From NCBI GenBank assembly GCA_964252035.1, contig OZ176200.1: a stretch of 64,000 nucleotides of DNA, one strand, 5' to 3'. Position 1 is the first letter of the stretch. Each line of letters opens with the position of its first letter. The stretch is from Podarcis erhardii. Lineage: Eukaryota. This document shows, piece by piece, positions 12,654-37,036 of the stretch. The notes beneath the pieces were generated by a model. It ran no database searches and had not been told where the DNA came from. It saw only the letters and a list, made by a program, of their open reading frames with translations. The position numbers and the translations under genes are program-made.

Positions 12654-14159
12654 CTAAAGCATGAATGGAAATGAAAGTAGCAGCTAACAAGATTAGAATG
12701 AGATAGAAAATGGGGAAGGAAATAAGGTAAGACAGAATTAGATTAGATTTTTGGTAATATTTCCCAGCAAAGGTATATTATCTTAAAGGTTTCAGTACAG
12801 CTTATATCACGGTGTACCAGGAAGCAAAGGGAGGAAAGGATTTCATGTTTCACTCAAAAAGAATTTTGAGCATTACTAATGATTTTTTAAAAAATGGCAA
12901 AATGCTCAAGACACTTTTCTGCATTATATTACTGCTGAATAATTTCTAGCAAATAACCTCTCTGTAAGCATTTTGAGCCATCATATGTCCTAATTTGTAA
13001 GGATTCTCAGAGTAGCAGATTGGATCTTTCTAAGTTGCATGGGCTGGCTTGTTTTTACTCCCCAGTCACCTCTGGATAGCAGCCAAAGCTTTATTTTTGC
13101 CTCTGTGGGTTCATGTTTACACACAGCTTTTTGGGAAAGATTATTACGATGTTTGATTTAGGTTTTCAATCTACCACCTGCTTCTCCCTGATAGGTCTAA
13201 AGGGGAGTAGCAAGGGAGGATGAAAAAGTAGGAGACCATCTGGAAACTGTCAAAGAAGCAAAGATATCACAGCCTCAGGAAGGTCGCCTTTACAATGCTT
13301 TATTTGTCAACTTTGTCAGGAACATTCCCCCACCAACTCACTGGAACTTCTTTAGCATAGTGCTAAGCACTTCGTCCTTCACAGTGAGCCTTGAACATTA
13401 TCAGTCAGGTACAGCATCTGAAGAAAACTATTCAATATCCCTAAGAAAAGAATCTATCTTTATGGTCCGTTCCATGGGATAATTTCTCATGGGATAAAAT
13501 AATTATTAATTCTTTGCACTGGTATTCTGATTATTGATGCTGTTATTCATTAGACTTGCTAGCAGCTTGTTACTCAAAAGCATCCAAGCGATTTACAACA
13601 CATTTCAAAACATAAACACAAATCCATTAAAGAAGAAATGCATACCCAAAGGCAAAGGCCTGGCCAGGGCGGTTGTCCTCTTATATACCTGCTGGGATTG
13701 ACAAGGCATCTGACCCTCACCTGAATCTCATAACTCTCCTGACAGGTGATCTGGTCTGCAGCCACAGTTTGGAAATAAAGGATGAGATTGCCCACCGGAT
13801 ATCACTCTACTATTCAAATTAGCCCCCAGTGTTTTTGTTACAATCCCCTCCTCAATTAAGTAATCAATTTTAATCTAGAATTTAAATTCTCAAAACTTTC
13901 TTATTTGTTAATTCGAGCAAGTACGCTACTGCTCTCACTTCATTACAAGCAGTATTTCTACCTGCAACACACTTGAGCAAACCTGTTCCTCTTCCTTTCA
14001 CATATATATTTTGTTGCCATTTGCAACTGTAGCTGCCTCTGATTAGTTATCATTTAACTCTTTGGGAAAATAATTAGCATCACACATCATGTGCATGGAA
14101 GTTGCTGAACCAATTAACCAACTAGAAGGATTACTGTTAATAGCACCAGTTTTCCTATA

Positions 14160-30570: not shown

Positions 30571-30593
30571 CATTTTGGAGAACTTTTGATATA
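30571..30593. repeat. TSD of L1 copy A (left copy; right copy 36299-36321)
   Basis: cattttggagaacttttgatata versus cattttggagaacttttgagata, 22/23 identical. Confidence 0.9.
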
Positions 30594-31512
30594 TTTTTTT
30601 TATTAATTTTTTAAGAAAGTTTTTCTTTTACAAATTATTTGAACACAATCATATTCCATATGTTACAGGTTTTTGACTTCCCCCCGCTCCCCCCGCAATC
30701 CTCATACTTTTATATTTATTCCGCATTTCCTTTATAATTATATTGCCAGTTTATAAATCTTTACAGAGTCATACATGCAGCTCTTTTCCCTTTTACAATA
30801 CCCTTTCTCATTCACAAAGCCTCTTTAAATCCAACTAGCATTGTCTGCTCATCACAAATATTTTCCAGATAAATCGTAAACTTTCTCCAGTCCTGAGTGA
30901 ACTTGTGGTCTTTCTGATATCTAATTTTCCCTGTCAATTTATCTAGTTCAGCAAAGTCCATCAGTTTCCGCCTCCATTCTTCCAGTGTCGGTAGTTCCTC
31001 TTGTTTCCATTTTTGGGCCATTAAAATTCTTGCCGCAGTCACTGCATATTGAAAAAGTTTATAATCACTTCTATTAATTTCTCTTCCTGTAATTCCTAAC
31101 AAAAAGGCTTCTGGTTTCTTCACAAACGTATATTTAAACATCTTTTTCAGTTCATTATATATCATTTCCCAGAAACCCTTTACTTTCTTGCACTCCCACC
31201 ACATATGGTAAAACGACCCTTCCCTTTCTTTACATTTCCAACATTTATTACATGTTTTATACATTTTTGCAAGTTAACAGGAGTGATATACCATTTTCAT
31301 AATGTTTTCCTTTATCGTCATACATGCAGTGAATTTCATATTTTCTTTCCATACTTTCTCCCAGTCTGCTAATTATATATTATAACCAAAGTCTCTGGCC
31401 CAATGTATCATAACCGATTTAACTTCTTCGTCCTTTGTTTGCCATTCCAATAGCATTTTATACATTTTTGACAATACCTTATAATCGTTATTTATTATCT
31501 CTTTTTGAAATC

Positions 31513-31529
31513 TAGACTCTCCTTCAATA
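31513..31529. repeat. TSD of L1 copy B (left copy; right copy 36088-36104)
   Basis: tagactctccttcaata, 17/17 identical. Confidence 0.95.
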
Positions 31530-33232
31530 ATTGTTTCCAGAGATATTTTAAACAACTGTATGCACAAGGGCCACAGAATGAAATTAAAATTGAGAAATTT
31601 TTGGAAACATATGGATTACAAAAAATATCACAAGAGAATAAATTAATATTGAATGATAAAATTTCTGAACCGGAGGTTGAAGGTGCCATTAAGAATTTGC
31701 AACTAGGCAAGTCTCCAGGCCCGGATGGGCTAACCTCCAAATATTACAAAGACATGAAAGACTACTTAATTCAACCTTTAATGGAGGTTTGCAATGAAAT
31801 TATGGAAGGGAAAAGAGCGCCGGAGTCGTGGAAAGAAGCTTACATCACGCTTATACCAAAAAATGAGCTAGAAAAGACACAACTTAAGAACTACCGCTCC
31901 ATATCCCTACTCAATGTGGATTATAAAATTGTTGCTGATATTTTGGCTAAAAGATTGGAAAAAAATTTAGTAACAATGATACATAAAGACCAAGCTGGCT
32001 TTCTCCCAGGCAGGCATTTGTCAAATAATACAAGAAATTTAATTGACATCTTGGAAAAATTACAAGTTAATATTAATACAAAAGCGGTTTGGATATTTAT
32101 TGATGCGGAGAAAGCCTTTGACAATATTTCTTGGAGCTTTATGAGGAAAAATTTGCAAGGGATGGGGGTTGGAGATAGGTTTGGAAACGGTATAGGTTCG
32201 ATTTATTCAGAACAAAAGGCAAAATTAATAGTGAACAATGTAGTTACAGAAGAAGTTAAGATTGAGAAAGGTACACGACAAGGCTGCCCAATTTCCCCTT
32301 TGCTTTTTATCTCAGTCCTGGAGGTTTTGCTGAACATGATTAGAAGGGACCAACAGATTCAGGGTATACAGGTCAGAGTTAAACACTATAAACTTAAAGC
32401 TTTCGCAGATGACCTAGTACTGACATTACAGGAGCCAATCCCTAGCTCTAAAAGAGCTTTGGAGATAATACAAGAATTTGGTCAGGTGGCAGGTTTCAAA
32501 TTGAACAAATCTAAAACTATGGTTTTAGAGAAAAATTTAACAACAGCAGAGAAGGAAAGGTTTCAGGAAGAAACAGGTTTAACATTGGTGAAAAAAGTGA
32601 AATACCTAGGGGTGAACTTGACTTCGAAGAATGTAAATCTATTTAAAGACAACTATGAGAAGTGTTGGTCAGAAGTGAAAAAAGATCTTGAAATTTGGAC
32701 AAATTTGAAGCTTTCCTTACTGGGTAGAATTGCTGTTATTAAAATGAATGTATTGCCAAGAATGTTGTTTCTGTTTCAGACGTTACAAATCATTGACAAA
32801 ATGGACTGCTTCGAGAAGTGGCAAAAAGAAATTTCTAGATTTGTCTGGCAGGGCAAAAAGCCCAGAATAAAATATAAAATTCTTACTGATGCAAAGGAAA
32901 GAGGGGGGTTTGCCCTGCCGGACTTTAAGTTATATTATGAAGCAGCAGCTTTCTGCTGGTTGAAGGATTGGCTACTTCTTGAAGACACGGACATTTTGGA
33001 TTTGGAAGGATATGATAATGTTTTTGGGTGGCATGCATATCTGTGGTACGGTAAGGCTAAAGTGTATAAAGCATTTAAAAACCATATTGTCAGGAAAGCA
33101 TTGTTTAATGTCTGGATGAAATATAAAGATTTATTGGAAAATAAAACTCCAAGGTGGCTTTCACCTATGGAAGCAAAGGCCCTGAAAAAGCTTAACATGG
33201 AATCTAACTGGCCAAAATATTGGGAAATTCTG
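31529..33232 (+). pseudogene. L1 ORF2 remnant, reverse transcriptase domain (part 1 of copy B ORF2, 568 codons)
   Basis: Open frame with non-LTR RT motifs GKSPGPDG, YRSISLLNVDYKI, DQAGFLPGR, DAEKAFDNISW, GTRQGCPISPLLF, AFADDLV (catalytic xADD) and KYLGV. The endonuclease domain is absent because of the 5' truncation. Confidence 0.95.
33213..33232. repeat. TSD of element C (left copy; right copy 34908-34927)
   Basis: caaaatattgggaaattctg, 20/20 identical. Confidence 0.95.
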
Positions 33233-34907
33233 TTTTGTTTTGTTTTTGAATAATATTTATTAAAGTTTTCCAATTAATTACAAATTAATAAAACATCCAA
33301 TTTCAAATCTTTTTCCAATTACATCCTTTCAGGACTTCCCCTTCCCTCCCCCCCTTGTATTCCAAATCTCTCAAATGATCTCAACAAGTTCTTCTCCTCA
33401 ATTCAGACTTGTTATCCTTAACCCATTTTTTTTTTAAAAAAAAAACAACAACATTATTTTCCATTCCCCTAAAATCGGCTTATTCCCACCACGAGTTCCC
33501 CACTTTAGAATACCATGTAGATGTATATAGCCTAAATAAAACATAGTTTACGCCCTTTGGATTCCACATTTCCCACCCCCCCTTTTCCCGGTTGCGTTCC
33601 CAATGTTCCTCAATGTCCGATATTTCCACGTCTCTCTAAGTCATAGTCCTTTGCCAGTCCTCTTTAGTTTCGAATGTCCAATCATGGAAGGATTCTGTCT
33701 CAAAGAAAGGCCCATTTTTTCCATCCAGATTTTTATATCCAGGAGTGAAAAACTCCAAATTATAATCCTTAAGCTTGTCAAATCTGGATGTCCCAAACGT
33801 CCCCACTTTTGACTTGGTCCAATTCTTGTTATTTTGTTGTTCTTATTGATCACACTCCTCTTTCTATTTCTTTCTGTCCCTGTTTTCCTGCACAAATGTC
33901 CTAATTCCAAAAGTTAGTTCCTTTACAGAGGCTTGTTATTCAGAAACAAAACATTACGTCAAGTTCCTTTCATTCCACAACAGATGATTCCATTGTCTTC
34001 TTCGGTGTAATGGCCTCTGTAGTCATAATAATGTTCCATTTCTGCAGTTTCCCAGGAGATAAACAGTTCTGTTCCAATTTCCAGCTAAAACCACTTGTAA
34101 TATCCCTCGGCTCCTCTAGGTGGATTGCAAAAACTGAGTTCTCTTCCAGATCGCGTCCATTAGCCCTAGTAACTTTATAATCCTTATTTAAAACAATTTG
34201 TATCCAATTTATAACAAATATAACCAGCAAAGTCCTTGTAACATAGTCTCTATCTTATTTTCCGCTTTGACAGCTCTTTGACAGCTGTCAAAACTTGCCT
34301 TTCTCCTCTCCAAACTCCGTCATCGATCGCTCCCGGGGTTCCAGGGGGGTTGTTTTTAAGTCCGAATTCTACTTTCCTCCTCCAGCTCAATCTCATATTC
34401 TTCACTCGTGAGGTTAAAAACTTGCCAAAATGATGTTACTCCGATCTTAGTTATCAGATCCTTTGCTTTGACCCTTCTACAATGGAGGGGGTGGCTGACT
34501 TCCTTTTTTGCGCCTCCCCCGCTCGCTCCGAAATTTTTAAAATTTTTGTCCCTCTTTTTAGTCCAAGTTCCAATTACTTACGGGTTGTTCTTTTAGGTCC
34601 GAATTTTCAAAGGAAAAAGCCAGCGCTCTCCGCCGAATGGCATGCGGCTTCGCACGGCAGGGATAGCAGAGGACTCAAAACACCACGCTTCTCCCCGGCA
34701 CCCGATCCGTAGCCTTTAAAAAGGCTCCTTCACGAGTCGGGAGGGCGCTAACGGTGTCAGCCGAGTCTCCATGTCCACGGCCCCCGTGGCCGTGGTTTTT
34801 AAGGGTCCCGCATCGCCGGTGCGGTAGGACCCAGCCCCTGCCGTGCAGGCTCCCTCCGGAGCTCGGAGGGAGTCCGCCATTCAGCGATGGCGCCGACCCG
34901 GAAGTCT
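33233..34907 (-). mobile_element. Complete 1675-bp non-autonomous L1-dependent retroelement (element C)
   Basis: Perfect 20-bp TSD. The 5' end AGACTTCCGGGTCGGCGCCAT... is GC/CpG-rich. The 3' end has a G-run plus GGAAGTC, AATAAA and an A-rich tail (33233-33247). No ORF with RT, EN or ORF1 similarity is visible. Confidence 0.88.
34620..34907 (-). promoter_or_regulatory. CpG-rich L1-type internal promoter / 5'UTR of element C
   Basis: The only strongly CpG-dense segment in the window. ETS motif CCGGAAGT at 34898-34905 and YY1-like ATGGCG/CGCCAT cores at 34875-34892. L1 5'UTRs are known internal Pol II promoters; activity here is inferred. Confidence 0.65.
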
Positions 34908-34927
34908 CAAAATATTGGGAAATTCTG

Positions 34928-35755
34928 GAGCAGGAGGGAGACAAAGTGAAATTGCAGAGTTATGAGAAACTTAAGGACAAGGTGCGAGATTGGTTACATT
35001 ACTTTCAAGTAAGAGAGGCCTATCATTTGGATAGGAAAATCGGTTTCCAGGTGGAAAAATCAAAGTTGGAAACAGAATTGTTAGAACCCAATGCTAAGAT
35101 ATTGTCGAGAATGTATAATCTGCTGTTGAAATGGAATACTGAGGATGAAACAGTAAAATCGGCTATGATAAAATGGGCACAAGATGTTGGTCATAATATT
35201 ATGTTTGTTGACTGGGAACAGTTGTGGACCACCGGCATGAAATTTACAGCATGTAATGCCTTAAGAGAGAATATTATGAAAATGATATACAGGTGGTACA
35301 TGACCCCAGTCAAACTTGCAAAAATTTACCACTTGCCCGATAATAAATGTTGGAAATGTAAAGAAACTGAAGGGACATTCTTTCACCTTTGGTGGACGTG
35401 CCCAAGGATTAAGGCTTTCTGGGAGATGATATATAACGAACTGAAAAAGGTATTTAAGTATACCTTCTTGAAGAAACCAGAGGCCTTTCTTCTGGGTATG
35501 GTCGGCCAATTGGTGCCAAAGAAGGATAGAACCTTTTTTATGTATGCTACAGCAGCAGCAAGAGTACTCATTGCAAAGCATTGGAAGACGCAAGATCTAC
35601 CCACCCTGGAAGAATGGCAGATGCAAGTAATAGACTATATGGAACTGGCTGAAATGACCGGCAGAATTCGAGATCAAGGAGAAGAGCAGGTGGAAGAGGA
35701 CTGGAAGAAGTTTAAAGTTTACCTACAAAAATACTGTAAAACCTTTGAATGTTGA
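34928..35755 (+). pseudogene. L1 ORF2 remnant, C-terminal region with CCHC zinc knuckle (part 2 of copy B ORF2, 275 codons plus stop)
   Basis: EQEGDK...CWKCKETEGTFFHLWWTC...KTFEC*. It joins in frame to ...NWPKYWEIL at 33232 once element C and one TSD copy are removed. Confidence 0.95.
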
Positions 35756-37036
35756 GGACTTTGAAAAGGAAAAGAAGGGGTTCTAGTGATTTAGTTAAAT
35801 AAGAGTACAAAGGGAGGGACAAAGAATGAAAATGAATAAAGAATGATCTTGCTGAACTAATTACTACATAGAATACAAGATCGGGAGGCGGGTGGAAGTT
35901 AGGAAAATAAGGTTTTGAAGGTTACAATTGAAAAGTGAGCTTTTATTTTTATGCTAAAATTTCTTTTTTTTTCTTTTTTTGTCTATGTTTTTCATGTTTT
36001 TCTTTCCTTTTTTTGTAATGTCTATGGAAATTTGCTTTTTTTGTGTCATTTTGTGTAAAATGCAATAAAATATTATTTTAAAAAAAATAGACTCTCCTTC
36101 AATATATCTCCTCTCTTTACAATCCTTTTTAAACATTTCATTTGTTTGAAAATAGTGCAACCAATCATATACATATTTTTTAACTTGTTCATATGGCTTC
36201 ATTTTCCATTTCCCCCCTTCTTTAATTACAATATCTCCATAAGTCATCCAGTCCTCTCTCATATTTGTCTTTTTAACACTCATGACCTCCAGTGGGGACA
36301 TTTTGGAGAACTTTTGAGATAAAATTTGTAAACCCCACCCTTGGAGAGTTGCTCCACAACCTGATCCCTTTCCTTCCAGTCTCCCTCTTCCTACTTTCCT
36401 AAACTTGGCAAGCTGTAAGGAGGTTTGGTGGCACTGTCTTAAACTGTAACTTGAGGGACCCATTGCAAAAAAAAAGCTCACTGCTGATAATAAGCATGGT
36501 TACATTACACAAACAGGTCATGTGATACATCTAGCCCCCTGAGGAACCGGTTCCTCATAAATTCCTGACAAATTTAGAGAATAGCCATTCCTACCCCTTC
36601 CCTCTCCCCAACTCACAAACATATGCCCAGTTGCTGAACATTTAATATTTAGCTCACCACTTCACTAGACCAGCCATCAATAAAGTTAGTACAGCGACAC
36701 AGGCAGTGGTAATGGAGTAAGTGGTCATCTGTTTACACACTCAGATTGTATGGAATGAGCCATGAATGCTTAGCAGGTCTTTCTGCAAGCCATTCTCCCT
36801 GGATTGTACCATAGCTTGCACCAGCAGTGGTGTCTGGTGCCGATTCAAACTGGTGGGGTGTAAGATAGGAGGCTAGGAGTAGGTTCAGCCAGAGCCAGTT
36901 TTGGCCCATCCTCCTCCCTGCTGAATTCTACAAGGGCAACCCTGAGACTAAGAAGGAGAAAGCTAACTGGCAATGCCTCTCTCTGGCCCAGTTGTAAGAA
37001 GGCAGGTAGGTGGGGTTGGCTGAAGGCAGACTGAGG

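What the first reader, a model, noticed from the sequence alone, without database searches (positions are those of the whole stretch)
33233..34907. Complete non-coding 1675-bp L1 parasite: L1-like 5' promoter and 3' tail with no ORF1 or ORF2
Seen: a perfect 20-bp TSD, an apparently intact 5' terminus (AGACTTCCGGG..., ETS and YY1-like cores, CpG-rich), AATAAA plus an A-rich tail, and only short ORFs (under 90 aa) with no RT, endonuclease or ORF1-like motifs. Established: long TSDs with a poly-A tail are the signature of L1 target-primed reverse transcription, and non-autonomous L1 derivatives such as HAL1 exist, but HAL1 keeps ORF1. Inference: this is a recently mobile element made of L1 5'UTR-like and 3'UTR-like sequence with both ORFs gone, carrying its own Pol II promoter and mobilised in trans. 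It may be a family not yet curated in lacertids.
Basis: partly seen in the sequence, partly recalled or inferred. Interest (0 to 1): 0.75.

Follow-up and report, generated by a model that had tools for sequence, protein, structure and literature searches.

The report
Non-coding L1-derived lizard retroposon copy
This is a young, complete copy of a 1.7-kb lizard jumping gene that encodes no protein but keeps the folded front end and the tail end of LINE-1, so it most likely borrows LINE-1's enzymes; the kind is known, and this scan had already noted what is probably the same family elsewhere in this genome.

Summary
Window 33233-34907 (minus strand) is a 1675-bp insert flanked by a perfect 20-bp target-site duplication. 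Removing it restores an unbroken 851-codon L1 ORF2. It has AATAAA, a short (CAAAA)n tail, no ORF over 89 aa and no Pfam, Rfam or tRNA match.

The L1 reading is now supported by alignment. Element nt 1-454 match the first ~450 nt of the 5'UTRs of six Podarcis and other lacertid L1s (67-74% identity; profile E 6e-81). Its first base lies within 3 nt of the 5' end of a TSD-bounded L1. The last ~185 nt match L1 3'UTR ends. The middle ~1030 nt match no L1 ORF, and their origin is unresolved.

It belongs to a family. Relative contig depth is high over the whole element in one species, and low over the body in three others.

The L1 head forms a conserved sense-strand RNA structure: 29 pairs show compensatory changes, against 13.6 in shuffles.

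Promoter use and trans-mobilisation by L1 are inferred, not shown. The scan noted what is probably this family before, on other DNA (s1-224440). The look-up of encoding contigs closed after 7 look-ups.

The parts
33213..33232 (.). Target-site duplication, copy next to the element's 3' tail
   Evidence: Identical 20/20 to 34908-34927. Empty-site joints 33212->34908 appear in runs X5 and X11.
33233..33247 (-). 15-nt (CAAAA)n A-rich tail
   Evidence: Sequence. TRF finds period 5, 3.2 copies. The target's 3' end TTCTG resembles the tail unit TTTTG, which suggests priming by microhomology (inference from one site).
33256..33261 (-). AATAAA polyadenylation signal, 8 nt before the tail
   Evidence: Sequence. 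The same AATAAATAT block ends the L1s in L003 and L004.
33233..33419 (-). Segment homologous to L1 3'UTR ends (element nt ~1489-1675), including the G-rich block at 33332-33354
   Evidence: blastn matches the extreme 3' ends of L1s: L003 13067-13129 (78%, E 3e-7), L003 12912-12969, and L004 19463-19517 (80%, E 2e-6). Alignment A1 with four L1 3'UTRs. The weak nhmmer hits fall only in L1 3'UTRs.
33420..34453 (-). Non-coding body (element nt 455-1488), origin unresolved; contains a T10A10 run at 33426-33445 and TGACAGCTGTCA at 34279-34290
   Evidence: No match to a profile of five L1 5'UTRs beyond nt 454. No ORF1 or ORF2 remnant. No Pfam hit. A weak colinear match to the long 5'UTR of the L013 L1 (E 0.004), sharing the 12-mer. 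Highly repeated in X1 but at depth ~4-10 in X4.
34454..34907 (-). L1 5'UTR head (element nt 1-454), CpG-rich, with ETS-like CTTCCGG (34898-34904) and YY1-like AATGGCGG (34874-34881)
   Evidence: nhmmer with a profile of five L1 5'UTRs gives E 6.2e-81 over nt 5-454. blastn gives 67-74% identity to six L1s. Alignment A2. Its first 335 nt are high-depth in all four runs.
34499..34898 (-). Conserved RNA structure inside the head: 11 helices within nt 10-290, plus helix nt 292-298 with 403-409
   Evidence: RNAalifold predicts 95 pairs. 95.8% of cells are paired. 29 pairs have changes on both sides, against 13.6+-2.3 in shuffles (0/500) and 4-12 in slid controls. There are 79 G-U cells against 10 A-C cells, which favours the sense strand. 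The single-sequence fold is -167 kcal/mol, z -6.2.
34573..34581 (-). Splice-donor-like GTAAGTAAT, conserved as GTGAGTA in most L1 heads
   Evidence: Alignment A2, columns ~336-346. Its function was not tested.
34908..34927 (.). Target-site duplication, copy next to the element's 5' end
31530..36087 (+). Host: 5'-truncated L1 (ORF2 and 3'UTR) into which the element inserted in antisense
   Evidence: RVT_1 domain. Restored 851-codon ORF2. 17-bp TSD TAGACTCTCCTTCAATA at 31513 and 36088.
30590..36298 (-). Outer shell of the nest: an older minus-strand L1 3' fragment that holds the host L1
   Evidence: 19-bp TSD CATTTTGGAGAACTTTTGA at 30571 and 36299. Its 3' end shares the G-rich block.

Best explanation
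This is a full-length, recently inserted copy of an ORF-less, non-autonomous retroposon family derived from lacertid LINE-1. In effect it is a 'short internally deleted element' of L1. It keeps the first ~454 nt of the L1 5'UTR, which is a CpG-rich head that starts at the L1 transcription start. That head carries conserved ETS-like and YY1-like motifs and folds into a conserved RNA structure. It also keeps the last ~185 nt of the L1 3'UTR, with the G-rich block, AATAAA and an A-rich tail. Between them lie ~1030 nt of non-coding sequence of unresolved origin. Shown here: the insertion anatomy, the homology of both ends to L1, the absence of coding capacity, the repeated status of the sequence, and the covariation in the head. 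Inferred: the head acts as an internal Pol II promoter, so each new copy can be transcribed from its first base. The RNA is then polyadenylated at the L1 signal. L1 ORF2p, probably with ORF1p, is supplied in trans by active L1s, recognises or captures the RNA, and copies it by target-primed reverse transcription. Here that made a nick after TTCTG on the plus strand and a 20-bp duplication.
For: Clean insertion: perfect 20-bp TSD and a restored 851-codon ORF2, plus empty-site joints. 5' homology to L1s that carry ORF1, EN and RT: L003 (E 4.6e-18 by blastn, 3.7e-29 by nhmmer), L004, L005, L007, L012 and L013 (E 1e-36 to 1e-43), and a five-sequence profile at E 6.2e-81. The 5' end coincides within 3 nt with that of the TSD-bounded L1 in L004. 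3' homology lies at the extreme ends of the same L1s. No ORFs, domains or RNA families were found. Family status: in X1 the summed contig depth over the whole element is 1e5-7e5, against ~1e6 on the flanking L1 ORF2, and 7227 contigs were laid. In X4 the body has depth 4-10 against flanks of ~1e5, while the first 335 nt stay at 1e4-3e4. Structure.
Against: I saw no second full-length copy with its own TSD. Abundance rests on summed depths of short contigs, which is not a copy count. 62% of the element is not shown to come from L1. The sampled L1 partners come from other genomes and are only 67-74% identical in the head. No L1 of this genome with a matching head was available. No RNA run holds the sequence, so transcription is unshown. 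The nick site (TTCTG/GA) is not the TTTT/AA typical of mammalian L1. Dfam and Repbase could not be searched.
Confidence: 0.8

Rival explanations
1. It is a decayed member of the 'half-L1' families (1.85-1.9 kb, one small ORF1-like gene) that other notes of this scan report in the same genome. On this reading the body is a ruined mini-ORF1 rather than UTR or foreign sequence.
For: Notes s1-220626 and s1-241316 describe RT-less L1 derivatives of similar size in this genome. Those notes are unchecked here. The head and tail would be shared.
Against: blastx of the element against twelve lacertid ORF1 proteins gives nothing better than E 0.98. tblastx against a full L1 gives no ORF1 match. A perfect TSD and an intact CpG-rich head argue against heavy decay of this copy. 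I had no half-L1 sequence to compare directly.
Confidence: 0.1
2. It is an SVA-like composite. An L1 head and an L1 tail were joined to ~1 kb of captured host or other-repeat sequence, for example by template switching. This differs from the best explanation only in the origin of the body.
For: The body does not match five L1 5'UTRs that remain 58-78% alike among themselves up to ORF1. The body is near single-copy depth in X4, while the head is high-copy there. An internal T10A10 run sits at the body/tail junction.
Against: A colinear weak match to the long 5'UTR of the L013 L1 reaches nt ~700-800 and includes a 12-mer found nowhere else in ~230 kb searched. There is no VNTR, SINE or tRNA part.
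Confidence: 0.3
3. It is a one-off: an L1 copy that lost its ORFs by an internal deletion during or after insertion, and exists at this locus only.
For: The window holds only one copy.
Against: The whole body is laid by thousands of contigs at very high summed depth in X1. Near-identical pieces (99%) occur in other species' runs. Note s1-224440 reports two further ~1.63-kb copies on other DNA.
Confidence: 0.02
4. It is a processed pseudogene of a host Pol II transcript such as a lncRNA, or an element mobilised by a LINE clade other than L1.
For: CTTCCGG and ATGGCGG near a transcription start are also typical of housekeeping promoters. The element is non-coding.
Against: Both termini are homologous to L1 termini. 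The sequence is highly repeated. The long TSD with an A-rich tail fits L1-type integration.
Confidence: 0.03

Closest known systems
HAL1 (half-L1) of mammals
   Same: A non-autonomous derivative of L1 that keeps L1 ends and depends on L1 reverse transcriptase. It arose repeatedly (PMC5753468).
   Different: HAL1 encodes ORF1p. This element has no ORF1 trace.
SIDEs: short internally deleted elements of R2 (Drosophila) and of CR1 (Persaeus/Zenon, Lepidoptera)
   Same: Non-coding derivatives that keep the 5' and 3' ends of the parent LINE. In R2 these ends carry the RNA signals for 5' end formation and for protein binding (PMC3414825). Such elements are called rare (PMC6740152).
   Different: The clade is L1 in a vertebrate. 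There is a ~1-kb interior not explained by a simple deletion of the sampled L1s. The 5' end appears to be made by transcription initiation rather than by a ribozyme (no Rfam ribozyme hit).
RIME/ingi and NARTc/L1Tc pairs of trypanosomes, with the Pr77 head
   Same: An ORF-less partner shares the first nucleotides of the autonomous LINE, and these act as an internal Pol II promoter (PMC1874656).
   Different: A different LINE clade and host. The head there is 77 nt and doubles as an HDV-like ribozyme. Here the head is ~450 nt, with a ~300-nt multi-helix structure.
SVA of hominids
   Same: A ~1.5-2 kb non-coding poly(A) retroposon mobilised by L1 in trans, with TSDs (references listed in PMC5753468).
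   Different: SVA contains no L1 sequence and is built of hexamer, Alu-like, VNTR and SINE-R parts. Here both ends are L1 and there is no VNTR.
The ~1.63-kb ORF-less retroposon noted by this scan (s1-224440)
   Same: Same genome, similar length and non-coding. That note reports a conserved folded head of 335 nt. It is probably the same family.
   Different: I could not align the sequences, so identity of the families is not shown. That note did not, in the lines I saw, tie the head to L1 5'UTRs by alignment.

Membership tests
L1-type (TPRT) retroposed insertion | Target-site duplication flanking the insert, with a precise empty site | tested here: met
   20/20 TSD. Restored ORF2. Joints that skip 1695 nt.
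L1-type (TPRT) retroposed insertion | Polyadenylation signal and A-rich 3' tail | tested here: met
   AATAAA at 33256-33261 and a 15-nt (CAAAA)n tail.
Non-autonomous retroposon | No reverse transcriptase, endonuclease or other coding capacity | tested here: met
   Longest ORF is 89 aa. No Pfam hit. No blastx or tblastx match to L1 proteins.
Non-autonomous retroposon family | Many copies, each with its own TSD | tested here: inconclusive
   Repetition is shown by relative contig depth and 7227 laid contigs in X1. No other full-length copy with a TSD could be fetched.
SIDE (internally deleted LINE derivative) | 5' end homologous to the 5' end of the autonomous LINE | tested here: met
   nt 1-454 against six L1 5'UTRs. 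The terminus lies within 3 nt of a TSD-bounded L1 start.
SIDE (internally deleted LINE derivative) | 3' end homologous to the 3' end of the autonomous LINE | tested here: met
   nt ~1489-1675 against L1 3' ends.
SIDE (internally deleted LINE derivative) | Interior explained by a deletion of the parent element | tested here: inconclusive
   The body of 1030 nt is unmatched in the sampled L1s. There is a weak colinear match to the L013 5'UTR only.
HAL1 | Retains an ORF1 gene | tested here: not met
   No ORF1 similarity. No ORF longer than 89 aa.
SVA-like composite | VNTR and SINE-derived modules | tested here: not met
   No tandem array apart from the tail and two ~20-nt repeats. No Rfam hit.
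SINE | Pol III head derived from tRNA, 7SL or 5S RNA | tested here: not met
   No tRNA and no Rfam family at E<=1. The length is 1675 nt.
Processed pseudogene | Matches a spliced host transcript and has a single parent gene | not testable with these tools
   No lizard transcript or genome database could be searched by DNA. The L1 homology of both ends and the high repetition argue against it.

The most novel reading that the evidence does not exclude
The first ~300-410 nt of lacertid L1 RNA may be a conserved multi-helix RNA domain that acts in cis as a 'passport', for example in L1 RNP assembly or ORF2p recruitment, RNA stability or translation, on top of promoter function at the DNA level. 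ORF-less and half-L1 parasites would then succeed in this genome because they keep that domain. It would be a structured cis-element in a vertebrate L1 5'UTR supported by covariation, and a handle on how cis-preference is bypassed.
Probability: 0.35. Interest if true: 0.75.

Novelty: new variant of a known kind. Interest (0 to 1): 0.55.

Why it matters
L1 proteins normally prefer the RNA that encoded them. Protein-less RNAs that amplify to high copy number (Alu, SVA) are therefore informative about how that preference is bypassed. This vertebrate L1 has spawned a protein-less derivative that keeps exactly two pieces of the parent: a ~450-nt structured head and a ~185-nt tail. That points to those pieces as the minimal cis requirements for transcription and mobilisation. 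The relative depths suggest a species-specific burst, since the body is roughly 4000-fold more abundant relative to L1 ORF2 in one species than in another. That makes the family a candidate marker and a natural experiment on parasite-of-parasite dynamics in lacertids. The covariation in the L1 head is directly testable by structure probing and compensatory mutants.

Tried and rejected
- Other copies in the window: none by blastn or nhmmer.
- Rfam at E<=1: nothing.
- Exact look-up of ten element ORFs in the protein collection: none on record.
- Pfam on the same ORFs: nothing.
- First two Podarcis lilfordi L1 loci (L001, L002): no head, because both L1s are 5'-truncated or decayed. They served only for the 3'UTR comparison.
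- Loose local alignment of the 3' ends: not significant against shuffles. It was replaced by blastn and nhmmer hits at the true L1 termini.
- Internal monomer repeats in the body, as in mouse L1: only short 15-24-nt repeats.
- 54-aa ATG ORF in the head: not conserved, since L003 has a stop after five codons. Rejected as coding.
- Literature searches for a lacertid or vertebrate ORF-less L1 derivative: nothing specific found.
- No scan of metagenome or prokaryote collections was made, because lizard DNA is not expected there.

Full report
**Observation**

The insert is real and sharply bounded. The 20-nt word that begins CAAAATATTGGG occurs at 33213-33232 and again at 34908-34927, identical in all 20 positions. 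Between the two copies lie 1675 nt. Read on the minus strand, these start AGACTTCCGGG at 34907. They end with AATAAA (33256-33261), eight more bases and a 15-nt (CAAAA)n tail (33233-33247).

Cutting out 33233-34927 gives an 851-codon L1 ORF2 frame with no stop. That frame aligns without gaps to a Podarcis muralis ORF2 protein (P0001, 89% identity over 843 aa). In two other species' runs, contigs join 33212 directly to 34908, skipping 1695 = 1675 + 20 bases. These are L1 copies without the insert.

The first 300 nt of the element have 60-72% G+C and 30 CpG. The rest has 33-50% G+C, falling to 15% at the tail. No ORF inside the element exceeds 89 aa. Ten ORFs have no Pfam match at E<=1. There is no Rfam match at E<=1, no tRNA and no tandem array besides the tail.

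**Surroundings**

The element sits in antisense inside a 5'-truncated plus-strand L1 (31530-36087), which has a 17-bp TSD at 31513 and 36088. That L1 in turn sits inside an older minus-strand L1 3' fragment (30590-36298), which has a 19-bp TSD at 30571 and 36299. This agrees with note s1-259135.

The host L1 still has an open 851-codon frame, so it is young, and the element is younger still. The best protein matches of the host L1 are from Podarcis muralis and P. lilfordi. The genome is therefore lacertid.

**It belongs to a repeated family**

The window has no second copy. Public runs hold parts of the sequence in ten coded organisms. I laid the contigs of four runs on 33033-35107 at 85% likeness or more.

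| Run (organism) | Contigs laid | Summed depth over the body | Summed depth on the L1 ORF2 flanks |
|---|---|---|---|
| X1 (A, probably the source species) | 7227 | 8.6e4-6e5 (whole element up to 7.6e5) | about 1e6 |
| X4 (B) | 1514 | mostly 4-15, on 167-599-nt contigs about 99% identical | about 1e5 |
| X5 (C) | 1918 | mostly 1e3-2.5e4 | 1.2e5-2.3e5 |
| X11 (G) | 1270 | mostly 1e2-1e3 | 2e4-4.8e4 |

In X4 the first 335 nt of the element stand at 1e4-3e4 and the last ~80 nt at about 2e3, well above the body. Summed contig depth is not a copy number, but the ratios are informative:

- The whole element is highly repeated in organism A.
- Its two ends belong to something abundant in all four species.
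- The body has expanded in a lineage-specific way.

Variant contigs with internal gaps and replaced stretches show that subfamilies exist (tables 5 and 8).

**The 5' end is the head of an L1 5'UTR**

No lizard DNA database can be searched directly here, so I reached lacertid L1s through proteins. The window's ORF2 led to P. lilfordi proteins and to loci L001 and L002. Both L1s there are truncated and carry no head.

An EN-side fragment led to L003, an unplaced P. lilfordi scaffold. Its called genes lie in a row: a 274-aa protein, an Exo_endo_phos protein and an RVT_1 protein. The 274-aa protein is an L1 ORF1. Its relative P0126 is named 'L1 transposable element RRM domain-containing protein' by UniRef.

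Element nt 2-444 align to L003 6891-7331, directly upstream of that ORF1. blastn gives 66.7% identity and E 4.6e-18, and nhmmer gives E 3.7e-29. ORF1 relatives gave more loci. In each of them the same head lies at the start of a 0.9-1.5-kb 5'UTR:

| Locus | Identity to the element | blastn E-value |
|---|---|---|
| L004 | 70% | 3e-36 |
| L005 | 74% | 4e-41 |
| L007 | 74% | 9e-43 |
| L012 | 74% | 9e-37 |
| L013 (P. raffonei, minus strand) | 71% | 3e-36 |

A profile of five of these 5'UTRs matches element nt 5-454 to profile positions 5-449 of 960, with E 6.2e-81.

The L1 in L004 is bounded by its own TSD (AAAGAGTAAGGTGAGCG) and begins GCTTCCGGG. The element begins three bases further upstream. 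Its 5' end is therefore an L1-type transcript start and not a truncation point. CTTCCGG is kept in six of seven heads, and AATGGC is invariant in all seven.

**The 3' end is the end of an L1 3'UTR**

Element nt 1615-1675 match L003 13067-13129 (78%, E 3e-7). Nt 1540-1597 match L003 12912-12969. Nt 1617-1670 match L004 19463-19517 (80%, E 2e-6). All of these lie at the extreme 3' ends of those L1s.

An alignment with four L1 3'UTRs, two of them from the window itself, shows two shared blocks:

- A G-rich block, GGGAGG...GGGGAAGTCC, at window 33332-33354.
- A terminal block around AAACTTTAATAAATAT.

The L1s have an extra T-rich stretch between these blocks, which the element lacks. The only weak nhmmer hits of the element's tail elsewhere fall inside L1 3'UTRs, in the right orientation.

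**The body (nt 455-1488) is unexplained**

The five L1 5'UTRs stay 58-78% alike among themselves up to ORF1, but the element leaves them at about nt 454. blastx against twelve ORF1 proteins and 120 ORF2 proteins, and tblastx against a whole L1, give nothing.

One L1, the minus-strand one in L013, has a ~1.5-kb 5'UTR. It shows a weak colinear match reaching nt ~700-800 (E 0.004 on its own). That match includes the 12-mer TGACAGCTGTCA, which occurs nowhere else in the window or in the thirteen loci.

The body may therefore be the fast-evolving distal 5'UTR of an unsampled L1 subfamily, or it may be captured sequence. I cannot decide between these. A T10A10 run lies at the junction between body and tail.

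**A conserved RNA structure in the head**

The head alone folds at -167 kcal/mol, with z -6.2 against shuffles. On the seven-sequence alignment A2, RNAalifold predicts 95 pairs in 12 helices.

| Measure | Observed | Controls |
|---|---|---|
| Cells forming a standard pair | 95.8% | 89.2% in shuffles; 41-48% with the 3' partners slid |
| Pairs with changes on both sides | 29 | 13.6 +- 2.3 in 500 shuffles (none reached 29); 4-12 with partners slid |

Helix 3 (columns 63-74 with 256-267) has 8 of its 12 pairs with compensatory changes. G-U cells outnumber A-C cells 79 to 10, so the structure belongs to the sense-strand RNA. The element itself forms 90 of the 95 pairs.

Three caveats apply. There are only seven sequences, and two of them are nearly identical. 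The structure was predicted from the same alignment on which it was counted. R-scape was not available. This result agrees with the unchecked note s1-224440, which spoke of a conserved folded 335-nt module. Here that module is tied to L1 5'UTRs and tested on independent L1 sequences.

**Mechanism**

Shown here:

- A precise retroposed insertion.
- L1-derived ends.
- No coding capacity.
- Repeated status.
- A head under structural constraint.

Inferred:

- The head is an internal Pol II promoter. It lies at the L1 start and carries conserved ETS-like and YY1-like motifs, so full-length copies stay transcribable.
- The L1 AATAAA sets the 3' end of the RNA.
- L1 ORF2p, supplied in trans, nicks the plus strand after TTCTG, which resembles the tail unit TTTTG. 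It primes on the tail and copies the 1.7-kb RNA to its first base. A second nick 20 bp away gives the TSD.
- Whether the head also works at the RNA level is open.

**Comparison with known elements**

- The element works like HAL1 but fails HAL1's defining feature, because it has no ORF1 (PMC5753468).
- It fits the SIDE concept, in which both LINE ends are kept and the coding part is lost. SIDEs are known for R2 (PMC3414825) and CR1, where they are called rare (PMC6740152). The interior is not yet explained by a simple deletion.
- It parallels RIME/ingi and NARTc/L1Tc, where an ORF-less partner shares the promoter-bearing first nucleotides of the LINE (PMC1874656).
- It is unlike SVA, which has no L1 sequence and has a VNTR.

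I found no paper on an ORF-less L1 derivative in lacertids. Dfam and Repbase could not be consulted.

**Limits**

- Read laying and the look-up of sequencing runs allow one call each, and both were used.
- No RNA run holds the sequence.
- The scan noted what is probably the same family before, on other DNA of this genome (s1-224440). It also noted related half-L1 families (s1-220626 and others). I could not compare sequences with those notes.

Noticed in passing
window 30571-36317: A three-level nest. An outer minus-strand L1 3' fragment (19-bp TSD at 30571 and 36299) holds a plus-strand 5'-truncated L1 (17-bp TSD at 31513 and 36088), which holds the element. All three TSDs are intact.
   Followed up: yes
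window 34573-34585; A2 columns ~336-346: A splice-donor-like motif, CCGT(A/G)AGTA, is conserved in most L1 heads and in the element, at the end of the structured part. It could be a real donor (as in spliced L1 transcripts) or a U1-binding site. It was not tested.
   Followed up: no
window 33426-33445: A T10A10 run lies exactly where the unexplained body meets the L1 3'UTR-like segment. It could be a relic of an internal poly(A) or of a junction event.
   Followed up: no
window 33228-33247 and 34923-34932: The plus-strand nick lies after TTCTG, which resembles the tail repeat unit TTTTG. It does not resemble the TTTT/AA site of mammalian L1. This is one site only.
   Followed up: partly
runs X1 and X4: Relative to flanking L1 ORF2 depth, the element body is about 0.2 in X1 and about 5e-5 in X4, although X4 holds ~99% identical pieces. 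This suggests a species-specific burst from a low-copy source.
   Followed up: partly
L003 6881-6905: The P. lilfordi L1 in L003 has a short duplication at its 5' terminus: CCGGAGGTG occurs once before GACTT and again within the following CCGGAGGTGG. This suggests variable start sites or 5' end slippage.
   Followed up: no
L013 1-6531 (minus strand): A P. raffonei L1 has an unusually long (~1.5 kb) 5'UTR and only a partial ORF1 (residues ~58-167 matched). It is the only sampled L1 with weak similarity to the element beyond nt 454.
   Followed up: partly
window 33332-33354; L001 12173-12198; L003 ~12935-12960; window 35880-35905: A G-rich polypurine block is conserved about 100-200 nt before the tail in all sampled lacertid L1 3'UTRs. 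From my own knowledge, it is reminiscent of the G-rich tract in mammalian L1 3'UTRs.
   Followed up: partly
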